Shown one piece after another: positions 4,651-63,596 of a stretch of DNA of 64,000 nucleotides. This DNA comes from Macrostomum lignano (Eukaryota). The DNA lies in contig NIVC01000054.1 in the NCBI GenBank assembly GCA_002269645.1, positions 5,142-69,141 on the forward strand, given 5' to 3'. The notes beneath the pieces are model-generated. The model made no database searches. It saw nothing but the letters and a program-made list of their open reading frames with translations, and was not told the origin of the DNA. Made by a program: the position numbers and the translations under genes. The first letter of the stretch is position 1, and each line of letters starts with the position of its first letter.

Positions 4651-5555
4651 CTCTTGTTAAACTTTTTCAATTAGTCGAATAAATTAAAACTAAAACGAGT
4701 TGATTCTCGAAGACCCGAACCGAAAATGCTGAAATGCGATCCGAAGGCTGAGATGAACAGACGGGGGCTTCAGGAGCGACTGCAGGAGACTGAGAGGTAG
4801 AGAGGGCCAACTGCCGTTCCTGTGGATGCAGCATTTTATAACGGCCGATCCTCCGCAATGGGAAGCGGAGGGGGGCTGAAAGGAAGGTCGGGAGTACCAA
4901 AGGAGGGGGTTGGGCGCGTTCACCAAAATGTTGGACCTGAAGCAGGCTTTAGCGAATGCCATCCATTCAAGCAGTCCCAGAATTCCGCTTTGACCCCCGG
5001 GAGGCCTGCAGCCTCTCTCTGCCTTGCACCACCGGCAAGGAGCAAAACTTTCGCTTAGGAACGTTCGAAACTCTCCCTCTGCAGCCCACGCACCTCCTGA
5101 AAGCCAGCAATCGATAGTCGCTGATAGCGCTTCTGCCCCCTCTTTCTCTCTGACTGGATCTGATCTGCTTCATGGCATTTAAGCCACAGATTCAGGCAGC
5201 GAATAGATTGGGACGCAGCTTGCATTGCGCCAATGAACATTCAGTCGTACAGGGACCTCCTAGCCAGACTGAAGACTCCAGCATCTGCGCAGCTACCGCA
5301 TTTTGGGTTGCAGCACTCTTGTCAGGCCTTCCCCGCTGCATGGGTCCGTTGTAGCTGCACACTGTCGTCCTGTCCTGCATGTCCTTTGCCTCGACTGCTG
5401 GGGAAGGAAACTGCAGTGGAAACGGCGCCGGTTGCAGTCAAAATCGAAGCTCTTTTTGCTTAAGCATTCAGCGGAATCTTATAGCAACAACTGTTTTATA
5501 ATGTCTTTACTTTAGACGGCGGTGCCTGGCTGGCATGAAAAAATATTGTTTAAGA

Positions 5556-6290
5556 ACAGGACGAGCTCGAACAGTGTCACAAAATGGTTGAAGGACGAGC
5601 TCAAAGAGTGTCAGAGAACGGTTGTAGGACGAGCTCAAAGAGTGTCAGAGAATGGTTGTAGGACGAGCTCAAAGAGTATTAGAGAATGGTTGTAGGACGA
5701 GCTCAAAGAGTGTCAGAGAACGGTTGTAGGACGAGCTCGAAGAGTGTCACAAAATGGTTGAAGGACGAGCTCAAAGAGTGTCAGAGAATGGTTGTAGGAC
5801 GAGCTCAAAGAGTATTAGAGAATGGTTGTAGGACGAGCTCAAAGAGTGTCAGAGAACGGTTGTAGGACGAGCTCGAAGAGTGTCACAAAATGGTTGAAGG
5901 ACGAGCTCAAAGAGTGTCAGAGAATGGTTGTAGGACGAGCTCAAAGAGTATTAGAGAATGGTTGTAGGACGAGCTCAAAGAGTATTAGAGAATGGTTGTA
6001 GGACGAGCTCAAAGAGCGTCACAAAATGGTTGACGGACGAGCTCAGAGTGTCAGAGAATGGTTTTAGGACGAGCTTAAAGAGTATTAGAGAATGGTTGTA
6101 GGACGACCTCAGAGTGTCAGAGAATGGTTGTAGGACGAGCTCGAAGAGTGTCACAAAATGGTTGAAGGACGAGCTCGAAGAGTGTCAGAGAACGGTTGTA
6201 GGACGAGCTCGAAGAGTGTCAGAGAATGGTTGTAGGACGAGCTCGAAGAGTGTCAGAGAACGGTTGTAGGACGAGCTCAAAGTGTCAGAG
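5556..6290. repeat. 34-bp minisatellite
   Basis: Unit ggttgtaggacgagctcaaagagtgtcagagaat, ~21 copies with recurring variants. Confidence 0.95.
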
Positions 6291-6639
6291 AACTGTCAAG
6301 TTAAGCCTTACAGGCCACTTCATCGATAGAGATTTTGCTGTAGCAATGTTATGTAGCAGAAAACGAGTTCTGATGAGGTGCAAAGAATTAATTGACCCTA
6401 GGACTCAATTACTCAAAGTCGCCGAATTTGTAATTATATTATAACAAACAATTAACCGATCAATCAATAGTTGACTTGCAATACAGACTCCTTTCTATTT
6501 ATTTAAATTAAAATTTATTCAGATAAAACACAGATTTACGAATATGCGGCGTGGGGGACAGCAAGCGAATGAACTGACAAAACAGGTCTGGTGAGCGCAG
6601 CGGGTGCTGAGTTTGCTGCTGGCAATAAGATAGCTGCTT

Positions 6640-6975
6640 TCTTGGAGGTGGACACAGATGGGAAGAGGCGAACAGAAATGGTGAGAGGTGGACAGAGATG
6701 CTGAGAGGTGGGCAGAGATGCTGAGAGGTGGACAGAGATGCTGAGAGGTGGGCAGAGATGCTGAGAGGTGGGCAGAGATGCTGAGAGGTGGACAGAGATG
6801 CTGAGAGGTGGGCAGAGATGGGGGGAGGTGGACAGAGATACTGAGAGGTGGGCAGAGATGCTGAGAGGTGGACAGAGATGCTGAGAGGTGGACAGAGATG
6901 CTGAGAGGTGGGCAGAGATGGGGGGAGGTGGACAGAGATACTGAGAGGTGGGCAGAGATGGGGAGAGGTGGACAG
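6640..6975. repeat. 20-bp minisatellite
   Basis: Unit gctgagaggtggacagagat. Confidence 0.95.
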
Positions 6976-7651
6976 GAGTGCAATCAAAATCCCAAAACCA
7001 TAAGGTTAGCTGAAATTAGAAGCTGCAATCAAACGAGACGAGATTAGCGATAAAATATTCGTCTAACGCAAAAGTGCAATTGAAACGAACAAATTAAAAG
7101 ACAAAAGTACAAATAAAAAATAAAATAAAAACCTCTTTCACGCATAAATAATATGTGATAAATATTAACTATCACTGTTTCTACAATAATAAAAAAAGAA
7201 TCCAAATTTGAAACAAAGAGATACTATAAATAATCAAGTATTGAATAGCGGTGGTTTAACAGAATGAGTGCTATAGAACTTTGAGTACACACACACAGAG
7301 AGAGTCCGCAAGCTGTTGTCAGCCAGGGACAGCTTGAGACGCGGATTGAACAGGTGTTTTATCGCGTACATGCAGTCCGCAAAAGCCCACGGCCCAGGAA
7401 GCACAGGGAGAGACCAGAGATGGGTCAAAATGAAACCCTAATAGAGCCCCGATTTTGCACACGGACAGGAGTGTCGCACAGGATAGCAGGTAGGGTAATA
7501 ATGATAATAGTATATTTATATAAACTATAATTAAACAATAGTATTAAAGACCTAGCCTAGCACGAGACTTCGAATCTGTGAGAGTTACTAAGGGGGGGGG
7601 GTTAACCAGCTGCTGGAGGATTTATGAGCAGCTCCGCGGGTTGTCCGTCCG

Positions 7652-40661
<33,010 letters not shown>

Positions 40662-41495: not shown

Positions 41496-43609
41496 ATTTT
41501 TTCAAGAATCAACAAGAGATAGCGCCCGTACTTTTTGAATGTGCGAAATCGGGTCGCAATTTAACACAGACTACTACTGCCAAAAGTGTTAGTAGGGTGA
41601 AGCGCATCTACTCAGAAAAAATATAAATAGAATCTCAATTGAAACAATTCACTAATTTCTAATACTAGCATAATTATCTTTTATCAAAGGTGGTAGATGT
41701 GGCGGACAGTTGTTACATGAATATCACAGGTTTCGGTTCAATAAATTAATGCTACAACAAGTAGGGAGCGATAAATGGCATAATAAAATTAATTGTATTA
41801 ACATAATTTGGCATTTAAAGATTTGAAATTTAATATAGGTGGAATATATAATCGTTGATCTATGCAGAATTTGTAGAAACTATAAAACCACAGCTGCTAC
41901 ATAGTAAAAATTGAAGGCTTTGCCCTGAAAATTATTAAAGAAAGTATAATACTACTGCCTCGAAAAGATGACACTGGCACGACAAATGGTTGGAGTAAAG
42001 TGTGGGAAACTCAACACAGCTAGGCAATTAAGGATAAGTTGAGTACCAAGGAACTGATTATGTGCTGGTGAGAACTTTTATATTAATTGTAAAAAGACAT
42101 GTTGACTAAGTAATTGTAGAGACTAGACTTCATAATAGCTACCAAAATACTAACATATAAGTAAGCCAATACTCAAAGCTGCAGACAAGCCATGGCTCTA
42201 TGCAAAAATTTACATTTGCTGACAAGCTGAAATGTCTTACTTTTGGCCTGCAATTTTAATAGTAGAGAAGAAGGGATGATAGAAAGATTGAATAAGCCAG
42301 CTCAATTGTAACTCAGTACAAAACTAATGTGTACTTGATTAGTTGGCTGATATTCGTCCATGTTAATAATTTGCAGTTGGTGCATTTCCACACAAATTAG
42401 AATAAAATGAAGGCTAAAATACAATGAATTTCTTACCAATAGAGCTGTCCAGTTTGATGGCATTTTAATGACTTTGCTCTTGTAGTTTATCTAATAGCAT
42501 CAGACAATAGGGGAGTCAGACAGCCCTGAAATTTTTGTTGACAAAATTATGAACCACACATAATATTTAAAGGGTATTTTAAAGCAGGAAAAATTTTAAC
42601 AATAATGTTCTATTATATTGTTACAAGCATACTAGCTATAGATGCTTTATTAATATTATATATATAAGCATTCAAATTCATGTTTTAGTTCAGTGATATT
42701 AAATCTTAAATATTTATTTTTATAAACAACAACAACTTTTCAGTTTTAACATTTATACACAAAGGCCATAAATAAAATTCACCACAACCGTAATAAAGTC
42801 AATGAATTATGGATATTATAAAAAATTCTACCATCTTATGTACATAGAACTATCTATCTTTTACTAATAATCAGTTCAGTGTCATGGAAGCAAGAATCAG
42901 ACGAGGCATATATTTAATCCAAGTTTTAAAAAATAGTTCTAGGTATTCATTTTGAATAAAAAATTAAATTCAACGCAATTAGCAATTTTATATGTTAATT
43001 AAAAGGCCAACATGCCAGCTACAATTGACCCAACATTTTCTTACAGTTAATAACAGGTAAAGAGGTAAACTTTAAATTCTACAGATACAATTACCGTTCC
43101 TTTGTAAATACCATCCTGCTTATTTATAATTCTTGGATTCATGGATTGTTATCCTTTGTATAAAGTTCTCGTTCAGACCTGTATTCGACTATTTCTTCGA
43201 TGTTTCTATGATACACGAAATTTCATAAATATTATGAATTGGAAAATAAAGCAGCTTAAATTCAGGCCAGAAACAAAATTTGAACCTAAAATACAATTAA
43301 AAACATAAAAATATAATAGAGAAAACAAAACTGCGTGTTAGCTACTTTTGAACTGAACTATTTGTTTTAAAGTTGTTTTATCTTTTAATTTAGTAAAAAC
43401 TTGTTGATAAGTTGCAATGGACACATTCGCCACATGTCGTTCCGCGTCCTACTCGTAATAGAAAGTATCCACTGCAATAAAAACTTTTTGCCCTTCTTCC
43501 TTTACTGGAAAGAGCATGCATAAAAAAATTGCATAATATAACTCATGGCCATAGCATAAGCTTATCGAGGACCATTAGGCATTAAACAGAATTGCGTTAC
43601 AAAAGTATC

Positions 43610-43683
43610 TGGCCGGGGAGGGGCTCGAACCCTCGACCTTCGCGTTATCAGCACGACGCTCTAACCAACTGAGCTACTCGGCC
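43610..43683 (-). tRNA. tRNA-Ile, anticodon GAU (eukaryotic-type body)
   Basis: GGCCGAG TA GCTC AGTTGGTTA GAGC G TCGTG CTGATAA CGCGA AGGTC GAGGG TTCGAGC CCCTC CCCGGCC A. Full cloverleaf with one A6:C67 mismatch; A and B boxes intact; TTTT 5 nt downstream. Confidence 0.93.
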
Positions 43684-44282
43684 TTGCAAATGCCGACCTT
43701 TTTGTATCCGATATATACAATATACGATCATTTCAAATGATTTTAATAATTATTTTAGTTAGTTTGTCTGACAGGTCGAGCTGTCGAGCAGTTGTTAGTA
43801 GCTAGTTACAGCAAACAGCAGCTGAATTGCCTGAATCGACTGCTAGCGTTGCACCACCCTCAGCCTCAGGGAACGAGTGGCATTCTCTGAGCTGCGTAAA
43901 CAAATAAAAATAAATGGTGGAAGTCTCGGCTCTGTACAAGCCATAAACAGCCCTCCGCTTCTCGAATAAGCTGTTAGCTGCATACCTGGCCACTTTTGCA
44001 GAGTGTTCAAGCTAGTTCAGACTTTTTCAAACCTTTAAGGTTGTATCTTGAATCCTTAAAGTGGCGCTCAACATGCCACCAGTGAGTGCCACGTCTAGCG
44101 GAATGGGCGCCCGCGCCTTCCCGCTGTGTCCCCTCCGGGACAGCCCTGCAGCTAAGTAAAGAGTGCCACGTCAACCTGCTGTTCGAGCCAGCTGTCAGCT
44201 TCCAAGCCAGCTTAAAGCAGGACGGTCTGGACCATTGCCTGAGAAAATACCGGCCTCTGGCAGTCTGGTAAGCTTGAAAGAC

Positions 44283-44493: not shown

Positions 44494-44886
44494 GAGCACC
44501 AGAGGCGCCAGCACCAGAGGCGCCAGCACCAGAGGCGCCAGCACCAGAGGCGCCAGCACCAGAGGCGCCAGCACCAGAGGCGCCAGCACCAGAGGCGCCA
44601 GCACCAGAGGCGCCAGCACCAGAGGCGCCAGCACCAGAGGCGCCAGCACCAGAGGCGCCAGCACCAGAGGCGCCAGCACCAGAGGCGCCAGCACCAGAGG
44701 CGCCAGCACCAGAGGCGCCAGCACCAGAGGCGCCAGCACCAGAGGCGCCAGCACCAGAGGCGCCAGCACCAGAGGCGCCAGCACCAGAGGCGCCAGCACC
44801 AGAGGCGCCAGCACCAGAGGCGCCAGCACCAGAGGCGCCAGCACCAGAGGCGCCAGCACCAGAGGCGCCAGGACCAGAGGCGCCAG
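44494..44886. repeat. Near-perfect 15-bp minisatellite (~26 copies)
   Basis: Unit gcaccagaggcgcca. Confidence 0.98.
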
Positions 44887-45674
44887 CCGAGAGACTACTG
44901 CATGGAACTCCATGGGAATGAAAAGTTCGCATTCTTGAACATTGCCTATACCTGCAGTCTTACAAACAAACCTGTCACGGTCAAGGGGCCTGGAATTTCC
45001 ACCTCCTCTGTAGTCATGCAGCCAGTCGTACTTTGGCTGAAAGTGACAGCCTTTTTCAGCCACAGAGCTTCCGGCACAGTTATCTGCACAGTGCTTGACT
45101 GTGGTTGTCAATTCTATATGGCTGCAGTTGCTCCGATAAGATGGCAGCGAAAAAGATTAGTTATTCTGTTTAGAGAAGTCTCCCTCACTTCGGAGTTACC
45201 AAGGATGCTTGGAACTGACTTTTTTCTGGGTATGGAAGCTTTTTACGTTGGAATATACCAATATTGATGGGCTGCAGAGGGCAGAAATGAGCTATAATGC
45301 CGAGGCGTGTTAGTTCGTTTCGGCCCGATGCGGCCCATCCATATTAGTGTTATAGTTAGCGGGCAAAAAACCGCGTTTCACGGCCCGCTGAGACTGTCTA
45401 TGGCAAAATCAGAAGACAGCGGGGTCAAGGGCACAGTCACGAGTGCGGGAATGTATAATTCTTGAACGCTTACGAGTGCGTCAATGGCAAAAGCACGAGT
45501 GCGCGAAGTGCGCGAAACGACTGCCACCCCTTTGCAGGCGATCTCTGCCTTGTCCTTGTCCTTTGGATGTTCACGTGCTTTGATCACAAGCCAATGGCAC
45601 TCTTTCGACAGCCTAGCATATAGTCCACAATGCTGGGGCTGATCTTGCTCCTCTGCAGCAGTTGCAAATGCAGC

Positions 45675-46789: not shown

Positions 46790-48045
46790 TTTCACCCAGT
46801 TGGTTCCACACTTACCCCAGTTGGTTCCACACTTACCCCAGTTGGTTCCACACTTACCCCAGTTGGTTCCACACTTACCCCAGTTGGTTCCACACTTACC
46901 CCAGTTGGTTCCACACTTACCCCAGTTGGTTCCACACTTACCCCAGTTGGTTCCACACTTACCCCAGTTGGTTCCACACTTACCCCAGTTAGTTCCACAC
47001 TTACCCCAGTTGGTTCCACACTTACCCCAGTTGGTTCCACACTTACCCCAGTTAGTTCCACACTTACCCCAGTTGGTTCTACACTTACCCCAGTTGGTTC
47101 CACACTTACCCCAGTTGGTTCTACACTTACCCGAGTTGGTTCCACACTTACCCCAGTTTGTTCCACACTTACCCCAGTTGGTTCCACACTTACCCCAGTT
47201 GGTTCCACACTTACCCCAGTTGGTTCCACACTTACCCGAGTTGGTTCCACACTTACCCCAGTTGGTTCCACACTTACCCCAGTTGGTTCCACACTTACCC
47301 CAGTTAGTTCCACACTTACCCCAGTTGGTTCTACACTTACCCCAGTTGGTTCCACACTTACCCCACTTGGTTCTACACTTACCCCAGTTGGTTCCACACT
47401 TACCCCAGTTGGTTCCACACTTACCCCAGTTGGTTCCACACTTACCCCAGTTGGTTCCACACTTACCCCAGTTGGTTCCACACTTACCCCAGTTGGTTCT
47501 ACACTTACCCCAGTTGGTTCCACACTTACCCCAGTTGGTTCCACACTTACCCCAGTTGGTTCCACACTTACCCCACTTGGTTCTACACTTACCCCAGTTG
47601 GTTCCACACTTACCCGAGTTGGTTCCACACTTACCCCAGTTAGTTCCACACTTACCCCAGTTGGTTCCACACTTACCCGAGTTGGTTCCACACTTACCCG
47701 AGTTGGTTCCACACTTACCCCAGTTGGTTCCACACTTACCCCAGTTGGTTTCACACTTACCCCAGTTGGTTCCACACTTACCCCAGTTGGTTCCACACTT
47801 ACCCCAGTTGGTTTCACACTTACCCCAGTTAGTTCCACACTTACCCCAGTTGGTTCCACACTTACCCCAGTTGGTTCCACACTTACCCCAGTTGGTTCTA
47901 CACTTACCCCAGTTGGTTCCACACTTACCCCAGTTGGTTCCACACTTACCCTAGTTAGTTCCACACTTACCCCAGTTAGTTCCACACTTACCCCAGTTGG
48001 TTCCACACTTCCCCCAGTTGGTTCCACACTTACCCCAGTTGGGTC
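46790..48045. repeat. 21-bp minisatellite (~60 copies)
   Basis: Unit cccagttggttccacacttac. Confidence 0.98.
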
Positions 48046-49054
48046 CACCGCCCAGAGGAGTTAGCCAGTGCAGCCAGCTATGCATAATTAATGATGCAGC
48101 GCGAAGGAGTCGAATGTCGCCGTTACAGCTTGGCCCGACAAGTGAGGGCCAATTTGTCACAAAATTACAATAAAACCGACGTGAATGTCGTAAAGCAGTG
48201 CTTTTTTCACCGCATCCGATGACGTGCGCAATAACCAGGCTCCCCGCTGCGCCTCGGGTTCATTATACTGCTGCATGCGCGCGCCGATACACTTTCCCAA
48301 GTCTAGATAGCGGCCTTGCTTTCCCTGAATCATTTTCTCTCTTTCCATTTCTCGGCAATCTCCTCCCTCGCTATACTGCAGCTGCATTCCAGCCTGTGTG
48401 AAAGTTTTTCTTGTCCAAGCACCAGCTTACTAGTATAGCTTAGCAACAGATTCACCTTCGCCCTCGGTGAAGGAAGTCAGTTGGCCAGCGGGGTTGGGGG
48501 GCAGTCAGTTTATTATCAGCATCAAGTCGGTGGGTCCAGCAGCCTTCCGTATCCCCTCAGCACTGATTGGTCCCAGCACTGAGAGAGGAGGGAGCGCAGA
48601 GAATAGAGACTTTTTCAAGACGAAAATAATTGCATCGCGTGGAGCCCATGCCTCCCATCCGGTAGCGCACTTCATTCTCGGGTGCTGACAACTGTGTTTG
48701 GGAGCATTCCGGAGGCAATAGAAGCTGTGTTATAATTTATCTCAATTGATATTTCTTCTAATCTCTCTATTGGCCAGTTACTATAATATTAGAGCAGCAG
48801 GTGCCTGCTATTCTCTGCATTTGACAGCTTTGCATTGTAAGTGCAAGTGGGTCGGTTGGATCCGTTTATGATTTATTACTGTTATTACTACAGCCGTTAT
48901 TTATCTTGGGAATATTGGGAGCTATTTTCTAGGGAATTGTTTCTCGTGCAATTGTGCATCTACTTTATTATGAGTTAAAAGCGTACATTTTAAGGGGGCG
49001 CAAGTGTTTGTAAGGCGTTTGGTTTCTGAATTGCTGTTAGTAGTGACTACTAAC

Positions 49055-50406: not shown

Positions 50407-61594
<11,188 letters not shown>

Positions 61595-62330: not shown

Positions 62331-63202
62331 TCACGGAGATCCCTGCAAATTTTCCAGAGATAACTTGTCCCAGTCGGGCCAGAAGCGCTCCTTCATGCGG
62401 TCCACGTACTCGCACAGGTTGGGGGTGCTCTCCCGCATGAACTTCTTGTGCGGATAATTGATGGGGATGTAGAGAATCTGGGCCAGGTGGCCGAACGCGT
62501 AGCAATCAGCCGTTGTGGGCTCGTCTCCGAACAGGAACTGCTTGTTGCCGAGGGCTCTCGACAGGGCCATGATGTCCTGGAAGCCCATGTCGTACATCTC
62601 GGCCACCGAGTTGCGCCCGATGCCGTGGTAGAACACCTTCTTTCCGTAGCCCCTTGGGAAAGTGAAATACAGAAACTGGCGCAGCAGGTAGCCGCAGAAC
62701 TCCCAGGTGTTGATGAAGTTGACCACGTCCTCAACGTAGCGGTAATAGAAGTAGGAATAGACCGTCTGATTCTCGAGCATCATCTCCAGACCTCTGGCCA
62801 GGCCTTCCTGCTCATCCGTGAGGTTATCCTTCACGCCAAAGTGCTCAGTGAGCTTGGCGATGATGAGATTGGACTCGTTGTACTCCTGACCGTTGAGCTC
62901 CACGAACGGGATTTGGCCTTTCTGGCTCCACACCATTATCTTGCGCGTCACCGTGTGCGGGATCTTGTGCAGCCGGAGCCACGTCTCCAGTTTGAGGCCG
63001 AACGGGGACACGCTGACGATTGTGCGACAGCTGGGAAAGTTGAACATGTACACCTTGTCCTTCTCATAGTTGGCCACCGAGGACCCGTCCGCCTGCGGCG
63101 AACAACTCGAGCAGTGGCCCAGAGACAGACGGCGACAGCGCCAGAGGCCACAAAGGTGACGGTCTTCGGGCTCTTCGCCCACCAGTTGAGCAGCGAATCC
63201 AT
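62331..63202 (-). CDS. fax: Failed axon connections homolog (FAXC / metaxin-like GST fold), apparently intronless, with a 1-nt frameshift near 63072
   Basis: SPFGLKLETWLRLHKIP, SQKGQIPFVELNG, GNKQFLFGDEPTTADCYAFGHLAQ, NLCEYVDRMKERFWPDW. The N-terminal anchor MDSLLNWW..VAVCLWATARVVRRRR lies in the adjacent frame. Confidence 0.88.
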
Positions 63203-63596
63203 GCTTAAACGGCCTGCTATGCCAGCAGAGTTTCTGAGAACGAACGGGGCTTCTTTCAAAAGTAGTTTTTAACTGCTTGGCTTCACAGGTGATTCTGCCA
63301 CAATTTAAAGGCCGAGAGACCCCACATAAAAAGTCTGAGTTCGCCTTCAAACCACCGATTCTTATCTAATCAATTGAGCTTTTCTGAGCTCGCAGATTTT
63401 GGGCAGCGAGCCGAACAGAAAGCGATAGCATGAACCCCTGGTATCCAAGGCAGAAGTTGTGCATACTTAGCTTATAAACTTTTACTTTTATTTCTGCGCA
63501 ATGAAAACGGCAAAAGAATTCGATCTCTGATCTTTGCACTCTCGATCAGACAAATCGGACGTCTAATCAAATTCAGCATCAATGTCCAGCTGATAT

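What the first reader, a model, noticed from the sequence alone, without database searches (positions are those of the whole stretch)
43601..43717. Apparently functional nuclear tRNA-Ile with a GAU anticodon
Seen: complete cloverleaf with loop CT-GAT-AA, intact A/B boxes, a TTTT terminator 5 nt downstream and TATATA at about -29 to -34; the only defect is A6:C67. The body is the eukaryotic cytosolic Ile type (GGCCG..., TCGTG/CGCGA), not bacterial or mitochondrial. Known: eukaryotes normally decode AUU/AUC with A34 edited to inosine by ADAT2/3 and avoid G34 tRNA-Ile; GAU is the bacterial/archaeal/organellar solution. By eye, ATC is the dominant Ile codon in the exons here. Inference: this lineage may decode Ile with G34 tRNA, alongside or instead of I34, a departure from the eukaryotic rule. 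I cannot verify whether this is already reported for flatworms.
Basis: partly seen in the sequence, partly recalled or inferred. Interest (0 to 1): 0.7.

Follow-up and report, generated by a model that had tools for sequence, protein, structure and literature searches.

The report
Flatworm nuclear tRNA-Ile gene with GAU anticodon
The window really holds an intact-looking nuclear isoleucine tRNA gene of the flatworm Macrostomum lignano whose anticodon starts with G rather than the usual eukaryotic A; it is one base change from the normal flatworm gene, such exceptions are already recorded (one in another flatworm), and nothing here shows that the lineage has given up inosine decoding.

Summary
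A 74-nt tRNA-Ile(GAT) gene lies on the minus strand at 43610-43683 (ARAGORN; Rfam tRNA 67 bits). A6·C67 is its only non-standard pair. A and B boxes are intact, TTTT starts 6 nt downstream and TATATA lies at -34 to -29.

The window is Macrostomum lignano nuclear DNA. The tRNA body is the flatworm cytosolic Ile(AAU) type: 67 of 74 positions match Schmidtea ILE-AAT, including the whole 5' half and the anticodon stem. The same arm with G34 occurs in none of 185,579 prokaryotic species genomes.

If transcribed, the tRNA should be charged by IleRS and read AUC/AUU without ADAT2/3.

The broader inference, a lineage departure from I34 decoding, is not supported and could not be tested. No genome-wide tRNA census or homeologous copy was reachable. 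Exceptions to G34-sparing are already documented: a tRNA-Ile-GAT prediction in Schistosoma mansoni, and large tRNAomes in general.

A metagenome scan found an unidentified intron-bearing eukaryote with 11 identical, complete Ile-GAT gene copies, each with its own T-run.

Verdict: a real gene and a new member of a known kind. It is most likely a minor G34 variant alongside A34 genes; an early pseudogene is the main rival. Interest is modest.

The parts
43610..43683 (-). tRNA-Ile(GAU) gene, 74 nt, no intron, no encoded CCA
   Evidence: ARAGORN. Rfam RF00005 at 67.0 bits, full length. 67/74 identical to Schmidtea ILE-AAT_tRNA_1.
43647..43649 (-). Anticodon GAT (G34 at 43649) within the loop CTGATAA (C32, U33, A37, A38)
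   Evidence: It differs from the Schmidtea Ile-AAT loop CTAATAA only at position 34.
43665..43676 (-). Internal Pol III A box, TAGCTCAGTTGG (tRNA positions 8-19)
   Evidence: Read directly from the sequence. Identical to the Schmidtea Ile-AAT gene and to the environmental Ile-GAT genes.
43621..43631 (-). Internal Pol III B box, GGTTCGAGCCC (T arm)
   Evidence: Read directly from the sequence.
43616..43616 (-). C67, which with A6 (43678) forms the only non-standard stem pair. Schmidtea Ile-AAT and the environmental Ile-GAT genes have U67 (A6:U67).
   Evidence: Rfam marks 6:67 as non-canonical. Pair table. The cloverleaf with 6:67 open is -24.8 kcal/mol, against -29.6 for a hypothetical U67 version and -25.2 for the Schmidtea gene.
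43601..43604 (-). TTTT run starting 6 nt after A73: candidate Pol III terminator
   Evidence: Chance level is 12.5 % in the local sequence. All 14 complete environmental Ile-GAT copies have a T4-6 run at +4 to +12.
43712..43717 (-). TATATA at -34 to -29: possible upstream promoter element, function unknown
   Evidence: Chance level is 1.9 %. None of the 16 environmental Ile-GAT genes has TATA near -30, and no other M. lignano tRNA gene was available for comparison.

Best explanation
This is a genuine nuclear, Pol III-type tRNA gene of Macrostomum lignano. It belongs to the flatworm cytosolic tRNA-Ile(AAU) family but carries G instead of A at wobble position 34.

The mechanism below is inferred except where marked as shown.
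- Transcription: TFIIIC would bind the intact A and B boxes (shown in the sequence), and Pol III would terminate at the TTTT six bases downstream.
- Processing: after end trimming and CCA addition, the tRNA would fold into a normal cloverleaf, slightly weakened by the A6·C67 mismatch.
- Charging: eukaryotic IleRS should charge it. The enzyme reads the 6-carbonyl that G34 and I34 share, and yeast IleRS charges tRNA-Ile(GAU) about as well as its own IAU tRNA (literature).
- Decoding: the tRNA would read AUC by G:C pairing and AUU by G·U wobble, but not AUA. It would do this without needing ADAT2/3.

The most likely status is a minor, low-copy G34 variant that coexists with ordinary Ile-AAT genes. 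That is the kind of exception to G34-sparing already seen in other large, repeat-rich animal genomes. It is not a replacement of inosine decoding in this lineage.
For: - The gene and its structure are confirmed.
- Nuclear M. lignano context: the FAX-like ORF is 99 % identical to BOX15_Mlig003243g4. Mlig_3_7 contigs are about 98 % identical over roughly 10.7 kb of the window. Neighbours are spliced PDE2-like and Kv-channel genes.
- Body: 67/74 identical to Schmidtea ILE-AAT_tRNA_1. The seven differences are position 34, position 45, a compensated 50:64 swap (U:A to A:U), two G·U to G:C changes (49:65 and 5:68), and U67 to C. Stem pairing has therefore been maintained during divergence.
- The Rfam score of 67.0 bits is at least as high as that of an environmental Ile-GAT gene present in 11 identical copies (63.7).
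- A T-run lies downstream, as in all 14 complete environmental copies.
- No SINE or target-site-duplication signature, and no second copy in the window.
- IleRS accepts G34 (PMC11685878).
- Precedents: a tRNA-Ile-GAT prediction in S. mansoni (PMC2770079); low-copy G34 genes in other ADAT boxes in Schmidtea; large tRNAomes disregard G34-sparing (PMC5372738); two unrelated environmental eukaryotes carry Ile-GAT genes.
Against: - There is no evidence of transcription, processing, charging or selection for this particular gene.
- Relative to the Schmidtea and environmental genes it carries two derived transitions, A34 to G and U67 to C. One of them breaks an acceptor-stem pair, which would also fit early decay of an Ile-AAT copy.
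- It is a solitary gene in an AT-rich spacer between minisatellites.
- The T4 run alone is expected by chance 12.5 % of the time.
- The loop has C32/A38, which cannot pair. Pernod et al. link that combination with G34 to miscoding in 4-codon boxes (PMC7293025), although Ile was not tested there.
- I could not show that Ile-AAT genes exist in M. lignano, so 'coexists with AAT genes' is an inference from Schmidtea and from the general eukaryotic pattern.
Confidence: 0.55

Rival explanations
1. It is an early-stage pseudogene: an Ile-AAT gene copy that has picked up neutral transitions (A34 to G, U67 to C). It is either not transcribed or its product is unstable, so it contributes nothing to decoding.
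For: - Two derived transitions relative to the Schmidtea Ile-AAT and environmental Ile genes, one creating the A6·C67 acceptor-stem mismatch.
- The cloverleaf is about 5 kcal/mol weaker than a U67 version would be.
- It is solitary, sits in repeat-rich non-coding DNA, and has no tRNA neighbours.
- The flank signals are only modestly above chance.
- The reviews note that such 'prohibited' predictions may be pseudogenes (PMC5372738).
- From general knowledge: acceptor-stem destabilisation exposes tRNAs to rapid tRNA decay in yeast.
Against: - All conserved tertiary and promoter nucleotides are intact.
- Its Rfam score is higher than that of a demonstrably multi-copy environmental Ile-GAT gene (67.0 against 63.7), whereas a truly degenerate copy of that family scores 42.3.
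- The 50:64, 49:65 and 5:68 changes relative to Schmidtea preserve or strengthen pairing.
- A single A·C mismatch is common in functional tRNAs.
Confidence: 0.3
2. One reading: Macrostomum, or flatworms more widely, decode AUC/AUU mainly or only with G34 tRNA-Ile, having reduced or lost the I34 route for isoleucine.
For: - ATC makes up 77 % of Ile codons in the verified exons.
- S. mansoni also has an Ile-GAT prediction.
- At least one unidentified intron-bearing eukaryote has Ile-GAT as a multi-copy family: 11 identical complete copies in at least 10 flanking contexts, each with its own terminator. A eukaryote can therefore use G34 tRNA-Ile on a large scale.
- IleRS does not need inosine when G34 is present.
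Against: - One gene in one window.
- The only flatworm with a detailed tRNA table, Schmidtea, has several Ile-AAT genes and no Ile-GAT.
- The gene's body is the A34-type body with a single base changed.
- I34 reads AUC perfectly well, so codon bias is uninformative.
- No census of the M. lignano genome was possible, and ADAT2/3 status was not examined.
Confidence: 0.08
3. It is an assembly or sequencing error: the true base at 43649 is A, and the gene is an ordinary Ile-AAT.
For: The window carries at least one suspicious single-base indel. The FAX-like CDS is identical to two Mlig_3_7 copies over 873 nt except for one missing G near 63079, which breaks the frame.
Against: - That anomaly is an indel, not a substitution.
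- Differences from the Mlig_3_7 contigs behave like real divergence: about 1 % substitutions in non-coding DNA and none in the 873-nt CDS.
- A specific A to G miscall at the one functionally notable base of the tRNA would be a coincidence.
Confidence: 0.04
4. It is foreign or organellar DNA: a bacterial, archaeal or mitochondrial tRNA-Ile(GAU), a mitochondrial insert in the nucleus, a contaminant, or a giant-virus insert.
For: GAU is the normal Ile anticodon in bacteria, archaea and animal mitochondria (PMC8007984). Many IMG/VR viral contigs carry a tRNA-Ile with a very similar D-arm and anticodon arm.
Against: - The G34 pattern gave 0 hits in 185,579 prokaryotic species genomes.
- The viral genes are Ile-TAT (119), with 1 A34 and 0 G34, and their acceptor stems differ.
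- The body is 67/74 identical to the Schmidtea nuclear Ile-AAT and has a full canonical D arm and T arm.
- The flanks are M. lignano nuclear DNA.
Confidence: 0.02

Closest known systems
Flatworm cytosolic tRNA-Ile(AAU), e.g. Schmidtea mediterranea ILE-AAT_tRNA_1 (PMC7962491, Table S1)
   Same: 67/74 identical. Positions 1-33, both strands of the anticodon stem, the D arm, most of the T loop and A73 are the same, and so are the A and B boxes.
   Different: G34 instead of A34, so it cannot be an ADAT2/3 substrate. C67 gives A6·C67 instead of A6:U67. There are compensated or strengthening changes at 50:64, 49:65 and 5:68, plus G45.
tRNA-Ile-GAT prediction in Schistosoma mansoni (Copeland et al. 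2009, PMC2770079)
   Same: A nuclear tRNAscan-SE prediction of Ile-GAT in a flatworm genome, noted as absent from Schmidtea.
   Different: It was reported only as a list item. No sequence, copy number or expression data were available to me, so orthology with the Macrostomum gene is unknown.
Exceptions to G34/A34 anticodon-sparing in large eukaryotic tRNAomes (Maraia & Arimbasseri 2017, PMC5372738). From my own memory, unverified here: the few tRNA-Ile-GAT genes that GtRNAdb lists for human.
   Same: Low-copy G34 genes, with scores overlapping those of their A34 isoacceptors, in big repeat-rich animal genomes. Their function is unknown. Schmidtea likewise has low-copy ALA-GGC, PRO-GGG and THR-GGT predictions.
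   Different: Whether M. lignano has a majority of Ile-AAT genes beside this one was not testable here.
Multi-copy eukaryote-type tRNA-Ile-GAT in environmental DNA (metagenome GCA_013332715.1 / SAMN14350201; JGI contig Ga0099809_10022934)
   Same: The same D arm, anticodon stem and CTGATAA loop, 65/74 identical overall. It has G34, a T-run terminator, and intron-bearing AT-rich eukaryotic contigs.
   Different: There it is a gene family: 11 identical complete copies in at least 10 flanking contexts, with a fully paired acceptor stem (A6:U67). Here there is a single gene with a mismatch. The host organism is unidentified.
Bacterial, archaeal and organellar tRNA-Ile(GAU)
   Same: The same anticodon and decoding logic: G34 reads AUC and AUU, and another tRNA reads AUA.
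   Different: The body is different. The D-arm and anticodon-arm pattern of this gene with G34 was found in none of 185,579 prokaryotic species genomes. It is not a member of that family.

Membership tests
Eukaryotic nuclear Pol III (type 2) tRNA gene | Canonical cloverleaf with the conserved tertiary nucleotides (U8, A14, G18G19, U33, G53-T54-T55-C56, A58) | tested here: met
   ARAGORN and Rfam full-length match at 67 bits; pair table.
Eukaryotic nuclear Pol III (type 2) tRNA gene | Internal A box and B box | tested here: met
   TAGCTCAGTTGG and GGTTCGAGCCC read directly from the sequence.
Eukaryotic nuclear Pol III (type 2) tRNA gene | Oligo-T terminator shortly downstream | tested here: met
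   TTTT at +6 to +9. Chance level is 12.5 %, so this is weak on its own.
Eukaryotic nuclear Pol III (type 2) tRNA gene | Located in nuclear chromosomal DNA of the organism | tested here: met
   The window is about 98 % identical to M. lignano Mlig_3_7 contigs and carries spliced animal genes.
Eukaryotic nuclear Pol III (type 2) tRNA gene | Transcribed and processed to a mature CCA-tailed tRNA | not testable with these tools
   No expression data were accessible.
Cytosolic tRNA-Ile (IleRS substrate) | Anticodon N-A-U with A35 and U36, A37/A38, and discriminator A73 | tested here: met
   Loop CTGATAA and A73.
Cytosolic tRNA-Ile (IleRS substrate) | Body homologous to an established cytosolic tRNA-Ile of related species | tested here: met
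   67/74 identical to Schmidtea ILE-AAT_tRNA_1.
Cytosolic tRNA-Ile (IleRS substrate) | Aminoacylated with isoleucine | not testable with these tools
   Literature only: yeast IleRS charges tRNA-Ile(GAU) about as well as IAU (PMC11685878).
ADAT2/3-dependent I34 tRNA | Genomically encoded A34 | tested here: not met
   G at 43649. It is not a member of this family.
Bacterial/archaeal/organellar tRNA-Ile(GAU) | Sequence body shared with prokaryotic or organellar Ile-GAU genes | tested here: not met
   0 matches to the D-arm and anticodon-arm pattern in 185,579 prokaryotic species genomes. It has a canonical GC-rich cloverleaf. From general knowledge, flatworm mitochondrial tRNAs are reduced and AT-rich; no mitochondrial sequence was compared here.
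tRNA-derived SINE or retro-pseudogene | tRNA-related head followed by a body and tail, target-site duplications, and many dispersed copies | tested here: not met
   The T-run lies directly after the tRNA. No flanking direct repeats. A single copy in the window. Genome-wide copy number was not testable.
Low-copy exception to G34-sparing (a G34 gene beside a majority of A34 genes) | A34 isoacceptor genes present, and in the majority, in the same genome | not testable with these tools
   Only about 120 kb of M. lignano DNA could be read (the window, L001, L002 and L138), and it holds no other tRNA.
Lineage-wide G34 decoding of Ile | Ile-GAT as the multi-copy, conserved isoacceptor, with Ile-AAT absent or rare | not testable with these tools
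   No census was possible. Schmidtea shows the opposite pattern. An environmental eukaryote shows that multi-copy Ile-GAT exists.

The most novel reading that the evidence does not exclude
Macrostomum, possibly together with Schistosoma, may keep a functional, selected G34 tRNA-Ile as an ADAT-independent decoder of its dominant AUC codon. If so, it would belong to a wider and so far unrecognised set of animals or other eukaryotes that break the 'no G34 in ADAT boxes' rule for isoleucine. That set would include the unidentified host in metagenome SAMN14350201, which has 11 identical complete Ile-GAT gene copies.
Probability: 0.2. Interest if true: 0.55.

Novelty: new member of a known kind. Interest (0 to 1): 0.3.

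Why it matters
The replacement of G34 by I34 tRNAs is treated as a defining feature of eukaryotic decoding. It is also the reason ADAT2/3 is essential.

A functional G34 tRNA-Ile would make AUC and AUU decoding partly independent of ADAT. It would also bear on claims that G34 tRNAs are counter-selected in eukaryotes.

A single gene one transition away from the normal AAT gene does not establish this. It does mark M. lignano, an experimentally tractable flatworm, as a place where the question can be tested cheaply with a genome census and tRNA-seq.

The by-product may be the more useful lead: eukaryotic contigs carrying a multi-copy Ile-GAT family.

Tried and rejected
1. **Homeologous copy of the tRNA.**
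   - The Mlig_3_7 contig NIVC01004234.1 should carry it near position 1.8 kb. The nearest annotated gene, the Kv channel, is 12.4 kb away and the flank cap is 10 kb.
   - The ORF next to the tRNA is not on record.
   - The PDE anchor returned only a UniRef fragment with no contig.
   - A 897-aa concatenation of the unique ORFs around the tRNA found no protein in 5.8 billion.
   - With only about 1 % substitution divergence between copies, this test would have had little power anyway: about 0.7 changes are expected in 74 nt.
2. **Older paralogous region (P0002, L138).** It is not syntenic and holds no tRNA.
3. **Genome-wide census of Ile-AAT against Ile-GAT, and ADAT2/3 integrity.** Neither was possible with the collections available.
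4. **N34 scan.** I therefore have no A34:G34 ratio for metagenomes.
5. **Host of metagenome GCA_013332715.1.** The exact-match clusters carry no names and a literature search for the accession found nothing. Only sample identifiers were recovered.
6. **Literature hits for 'tRNA-Ile-GAT' or 'Ile-GAT-1'.** These turned out to be a mitochondrial tRNA in one paper and, in the other, a set that includes fMet and Ile2-CAT tRNAs and so looks bacterial (my inference). They were rejected as irrelevant.
7. **SINE or transposon origin.** Rejected: no flanking repeats.
8. **TATATA as a conserved promoter element.** It could not be evaluated. No other M. lignano tRNA gene was available, and the environmental Ile-GAT genes lack it.
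Full report
**Observation.** The described feature is real.
- ARAGORN reports a single tRNA in the 64 kb window: tRNA-Ile with anticodon gat at 43610-43683 on the minus strand.
- Rfam's tRNA model matches the same 74 nt end to end at 67.0 bits (gathering score 29). It flags only pair 6:67 as non-standard.
- On the minus strand the gene is GGCCGAGTAGCTCAGTTGGTTAGAGCGTCGTGCTGATAACGCGAAGGTCGAGGGTTCGAGCCCCTCCCCGGCCA. It has the loop CU-GAU-AA, discriminator A73, A box TAGCTCAGTTGG and B box GGTTCGAGCCC.
- GATAC-TTTT follows the gene (T-run at 43601-43604), and TATATA lies at -34 to -29 (43712-43717).

**Strength of the signals.** The tRNA cannot be a chance match. The flank signals are softer. In the surrounding 39 % GC block, a T4 within 16 nt arises by chance 12.5 % of the time, a TATATA in the -18 to -40 window 1.9 %, and both together 0.3 %.

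**Where it sits.** The window is nuclear DNA of Macrostomum lignano or a very close relative.
- A FAX/GST-like ORF is 99 % identical to BOX15_Mlig003243g4.
- Two contigs of assembly GCA_002269645.1 are about 98 % identical to window 53.3-64 kb.
- The differences are about 1 % substitutions plus short indels in non-coding DNA, with none in the 873-nt CDS. That is real haplotype or homeolog divergence.
- The window is packed with minisatellites. It carries a spliced PDE2-like gene on the minus strand, a Kv channel on the plus strand and the FAX-like gene.
- The tRNA lies alone in a unique AT-rich block of about 4 kb between the PDE and Kv genes.
- There is no second copy in the window and no repeat, target-site duplication or SINE architecture around it.

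**What kind of tRNA body.** The planarian tRNA annotation (PMC7962491, Table S1) gives the Schmidtea mediterranea ILE-AAT_tRNA_1 sequence. The Macrostomum gene matches it at 67 of 74 positions, including all of positions 1-33 and both strands of the anticodon stem. The differences are:
- position 34 (A to G);
- position 45;
- 50:64, U:A to A:U, a compensated swap;
- 49:65 and 5:68, G·U to G:C;
- position 67 (U to C), which turns A6:U67 into the A6·C67 mismatch.

The D-arm and anticodon-arm pattern with G34 occurs in none of 185,579 bacterial and archaeal species genomes, which excludes a prokaryote-type gene. With 6:67 left open, the cloverleaf has a computed energy of -24.8 kcal/mol. That is similar to the Schmidtea gene (-25.2) and about 5 kcal/mol weaker than a U67 version would be.

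**How it would work.** These steps are inferred; the sequence elements are shown.
- The intact A and B boxes and the T-run make it a plausible Pol III unit.
- A G34 tRNA cannot be an ADAT2/3 substrate and does not need to be one.
- Yeast IleRS is reported to charge tRNA-Ile(GAU) as efficiently as its native IAU species. The crystal structure shows Arg999 reading the 6-carbonyl common to G34 and I34, while A34 is poorly recognised (PMC11685878).
- G34 would read AUC and, by wobble, AUU, leaving AUA to a UAU tRNA.
- In the exons I could verify, Ile codons are ATC 43, ATT 9 and ATA 4. Its preferred codon is therefore the common one. This does not discriminate between G34 and I34 decoding, because I34 also reads AUC.
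- One caution: G34 tRNAs placed in A34-type bodies whose 32-38 bases cannot pair were toxic miscoders in human cells for 4-codon boxes (PMC7293025). This gene has C32/A38. Ile was not tested in that study.

**What is already known.**
- Reviews state that GAU is among the eight G34 anticodons 'missing' in Eukarya, and that I34 tRNAs are essential because G34 isoacceptors are absent (PMC8007984, PMC8266599, PMC8072771).
- Exceptions are on record. Copeland et al. 2009 list tRNA-Ile-GAT among the tRNAs present in Schistosoma mansoni and missing in Schmidtea (PMC2770079).
- Schmidtea's own tables hold no Ile-GAT but do hold low-copy ALA-GGC, PRO-GGG and THR-GGT predictions.
- Maraia and Arimbasseri devote a section to large tRNAomes that disregard G34-sparing, with function unknown (PMC5372738).
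- From memory only: GtRNAdb also lists a few human Ile-GAT genes.

**New comparative evidence.** A scan of metagenome contigs for the same arm with G34 returned 15 contigs.
- Thirteen come from one assembly, JAAUYG01 = GCA_013332715.1 (BioSample SAMN14350201, SRR11343832).
- Eleven of those carry one identical, complete 74-nt Ile-GAT gene, which is 65/74 identical to the Macrostomum gene and has a fully paired acceptor stem. One copy is cut off by a contig end and one is degenerate (42 bits).
- The upstream flanks are unrelated except for one pair (L124/L135, the degenerate copy and its relative). The complete copies L128 and L129 share a shifted stretch of upstream sequence (my reading), hence 'at least 10' flanking contexts. 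Every complete copy has its own T4-6 run at +4 to +12.
- The contigs are 37-44 % GC. They carry split XendoU exons and what looks, by eye, like a LINE-type reverse-transcriptase fragment (not scanned against Pfam).
- A JGI contig, Ga0099809_10022934, has two more copies of the same gene flanking a tRNA-Ala.
- A 75 % GC contig has a different Ile-GAT gene 1 kb from a eukaryotic SRP RNA.
- IMG/VR viral contigs with this arm are almost all Ile-TAT: 119 T34, 1 A34 and 0 G34.

So at least one eukaryote uses Ile-GAT as a multi-copy family. I could not identify the host, nor test whether it also has Ile-AAT genes.

**What could not be done.**
- The decisive test is the ratio of Ile-GAT to Ile-AAT genes in M. 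lignano. It was out of reach, because only about 120 kb of this genome could be read and it holds no other tRNA.
- The homeologous copy of the tRNA should lie near 1.8 kb on NIVC01004234.1. It is 12.4 kb from the nearest annotated gene and could not be fetched.
- With 1 % divergence between copies, that comparison would have had little power.

**Verdict.** 'Nuclear, cytosolic-type, structurally intact tRNA-Ile(GAU)' is supported. 'Functional' is plausible but unshown. A lineage-level departure from I34 decoding is unsupported.

The most likely reading (about 0.55) is a minor G34 variant of the Ile-AAT family, one transition away, able to work without ADAT and coexisting with ordinary AAT genes. 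The main rival (about 0.3) is an early pseudogene, given the derived A6·C67 mismatch.

It is a new member of a known kind of exception and of modest interest. The environmental multi-copy Ile-GAT family is a side lead worth following.

Noticed in passing
L123-L132, L134, L135, L137 (metagenome GCA_013332715.1 / JAAUYG01, BioSample SAMN14350201, SRR11343832); L133 (Ga0099809_10022934): An unidentified intron-bearing, AT-rich eukaryote carries 11 identical complete copies of a eukaryote-type tRNA-Ile-GAT gene in at least 10 flanking contexts. Each copy has its own T4-6 terminator. There are also one degenerate copy and one truncated copy, and the same gene occurs twice on a JGI contig flanking a tRNA-Ala-CGC. 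This multi-copy G34 tRNA-Ile family runs against the stated eukaryotic rule.
   Followed up: partly
L136 (Ga0255780_10010412), tRNA at 6371-6444(-), SRP RNA at 5080-5355(+): A 75 % GC contig holds a different tRNA-Ile-GAT (66.5 bits, TTTT at +4) about 1 kb from a eukaryotic SRP RNA (Metazoa_SRP, 94.7 bits). It is a second, unrelated eukaryote with a G34 tRNA-Ile next to another Pol III gene.
   Followed up: no
L003-L122 (IMG/VR viral contigs, several GVMAG giant-virus bins): At least 120 viral contigs carry a tRNA-Ile(TAT) whose D arm and anticodon arm are identical to the metazoan cytosolic Ile type (119 T34, 1 A34, 0 G34). Viruses appear to supply the rare AUA decoder in a eukaryote-like body.
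   Followed up: partly
window 62331-63203 (-), deletion near 63079: The FAX/GST-like CDS is identical to both Mlig_3_7 copies over 873 nt except for one missing G, which shifts the frame after residue 42. It is either an assembly indel or a real null allele in this haplotype or homeolog.
   Followed up: partly
window, whole length (e.g. 14400-16460, 17740-18960, 33340-35020, 44495-44887, 46795-48048, 52590-55620): By eye, a large share of the window is tandem minisatellites with 5-28 nt periods, filling introns and intergenic DNA and producing long spurious ORFs in all frames. Array lengths between the window and L001 were nearly equal where they could be compared.
   Followed up: no
window 5000-17500 (-): A PDE2-like (cGMP-dependent) phosphodiesterase gene with catalytic exons at 7655-10770 and a GAF-like exon (my reading by eye) near 16861-17000. 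No M. lignano PDE protein linked to a Mlig_3_7 (NCBI) contig turned up in the search, only a UniRef fragment.
   Followed up: partly
Schmidtea mediterranea tRNA tables (PMC7962491 supplements): The planarian tables list low-copy G34 predictions in other ADAT boxes (ALA-GGC, PRO-GGG, THR-GGT). PRO-GGG_tRNA_1 looks clean and has thousands of small-RNA reads assigned. G34-sparing may therefore be leaky in flatworms generally.
   Followed up: partly
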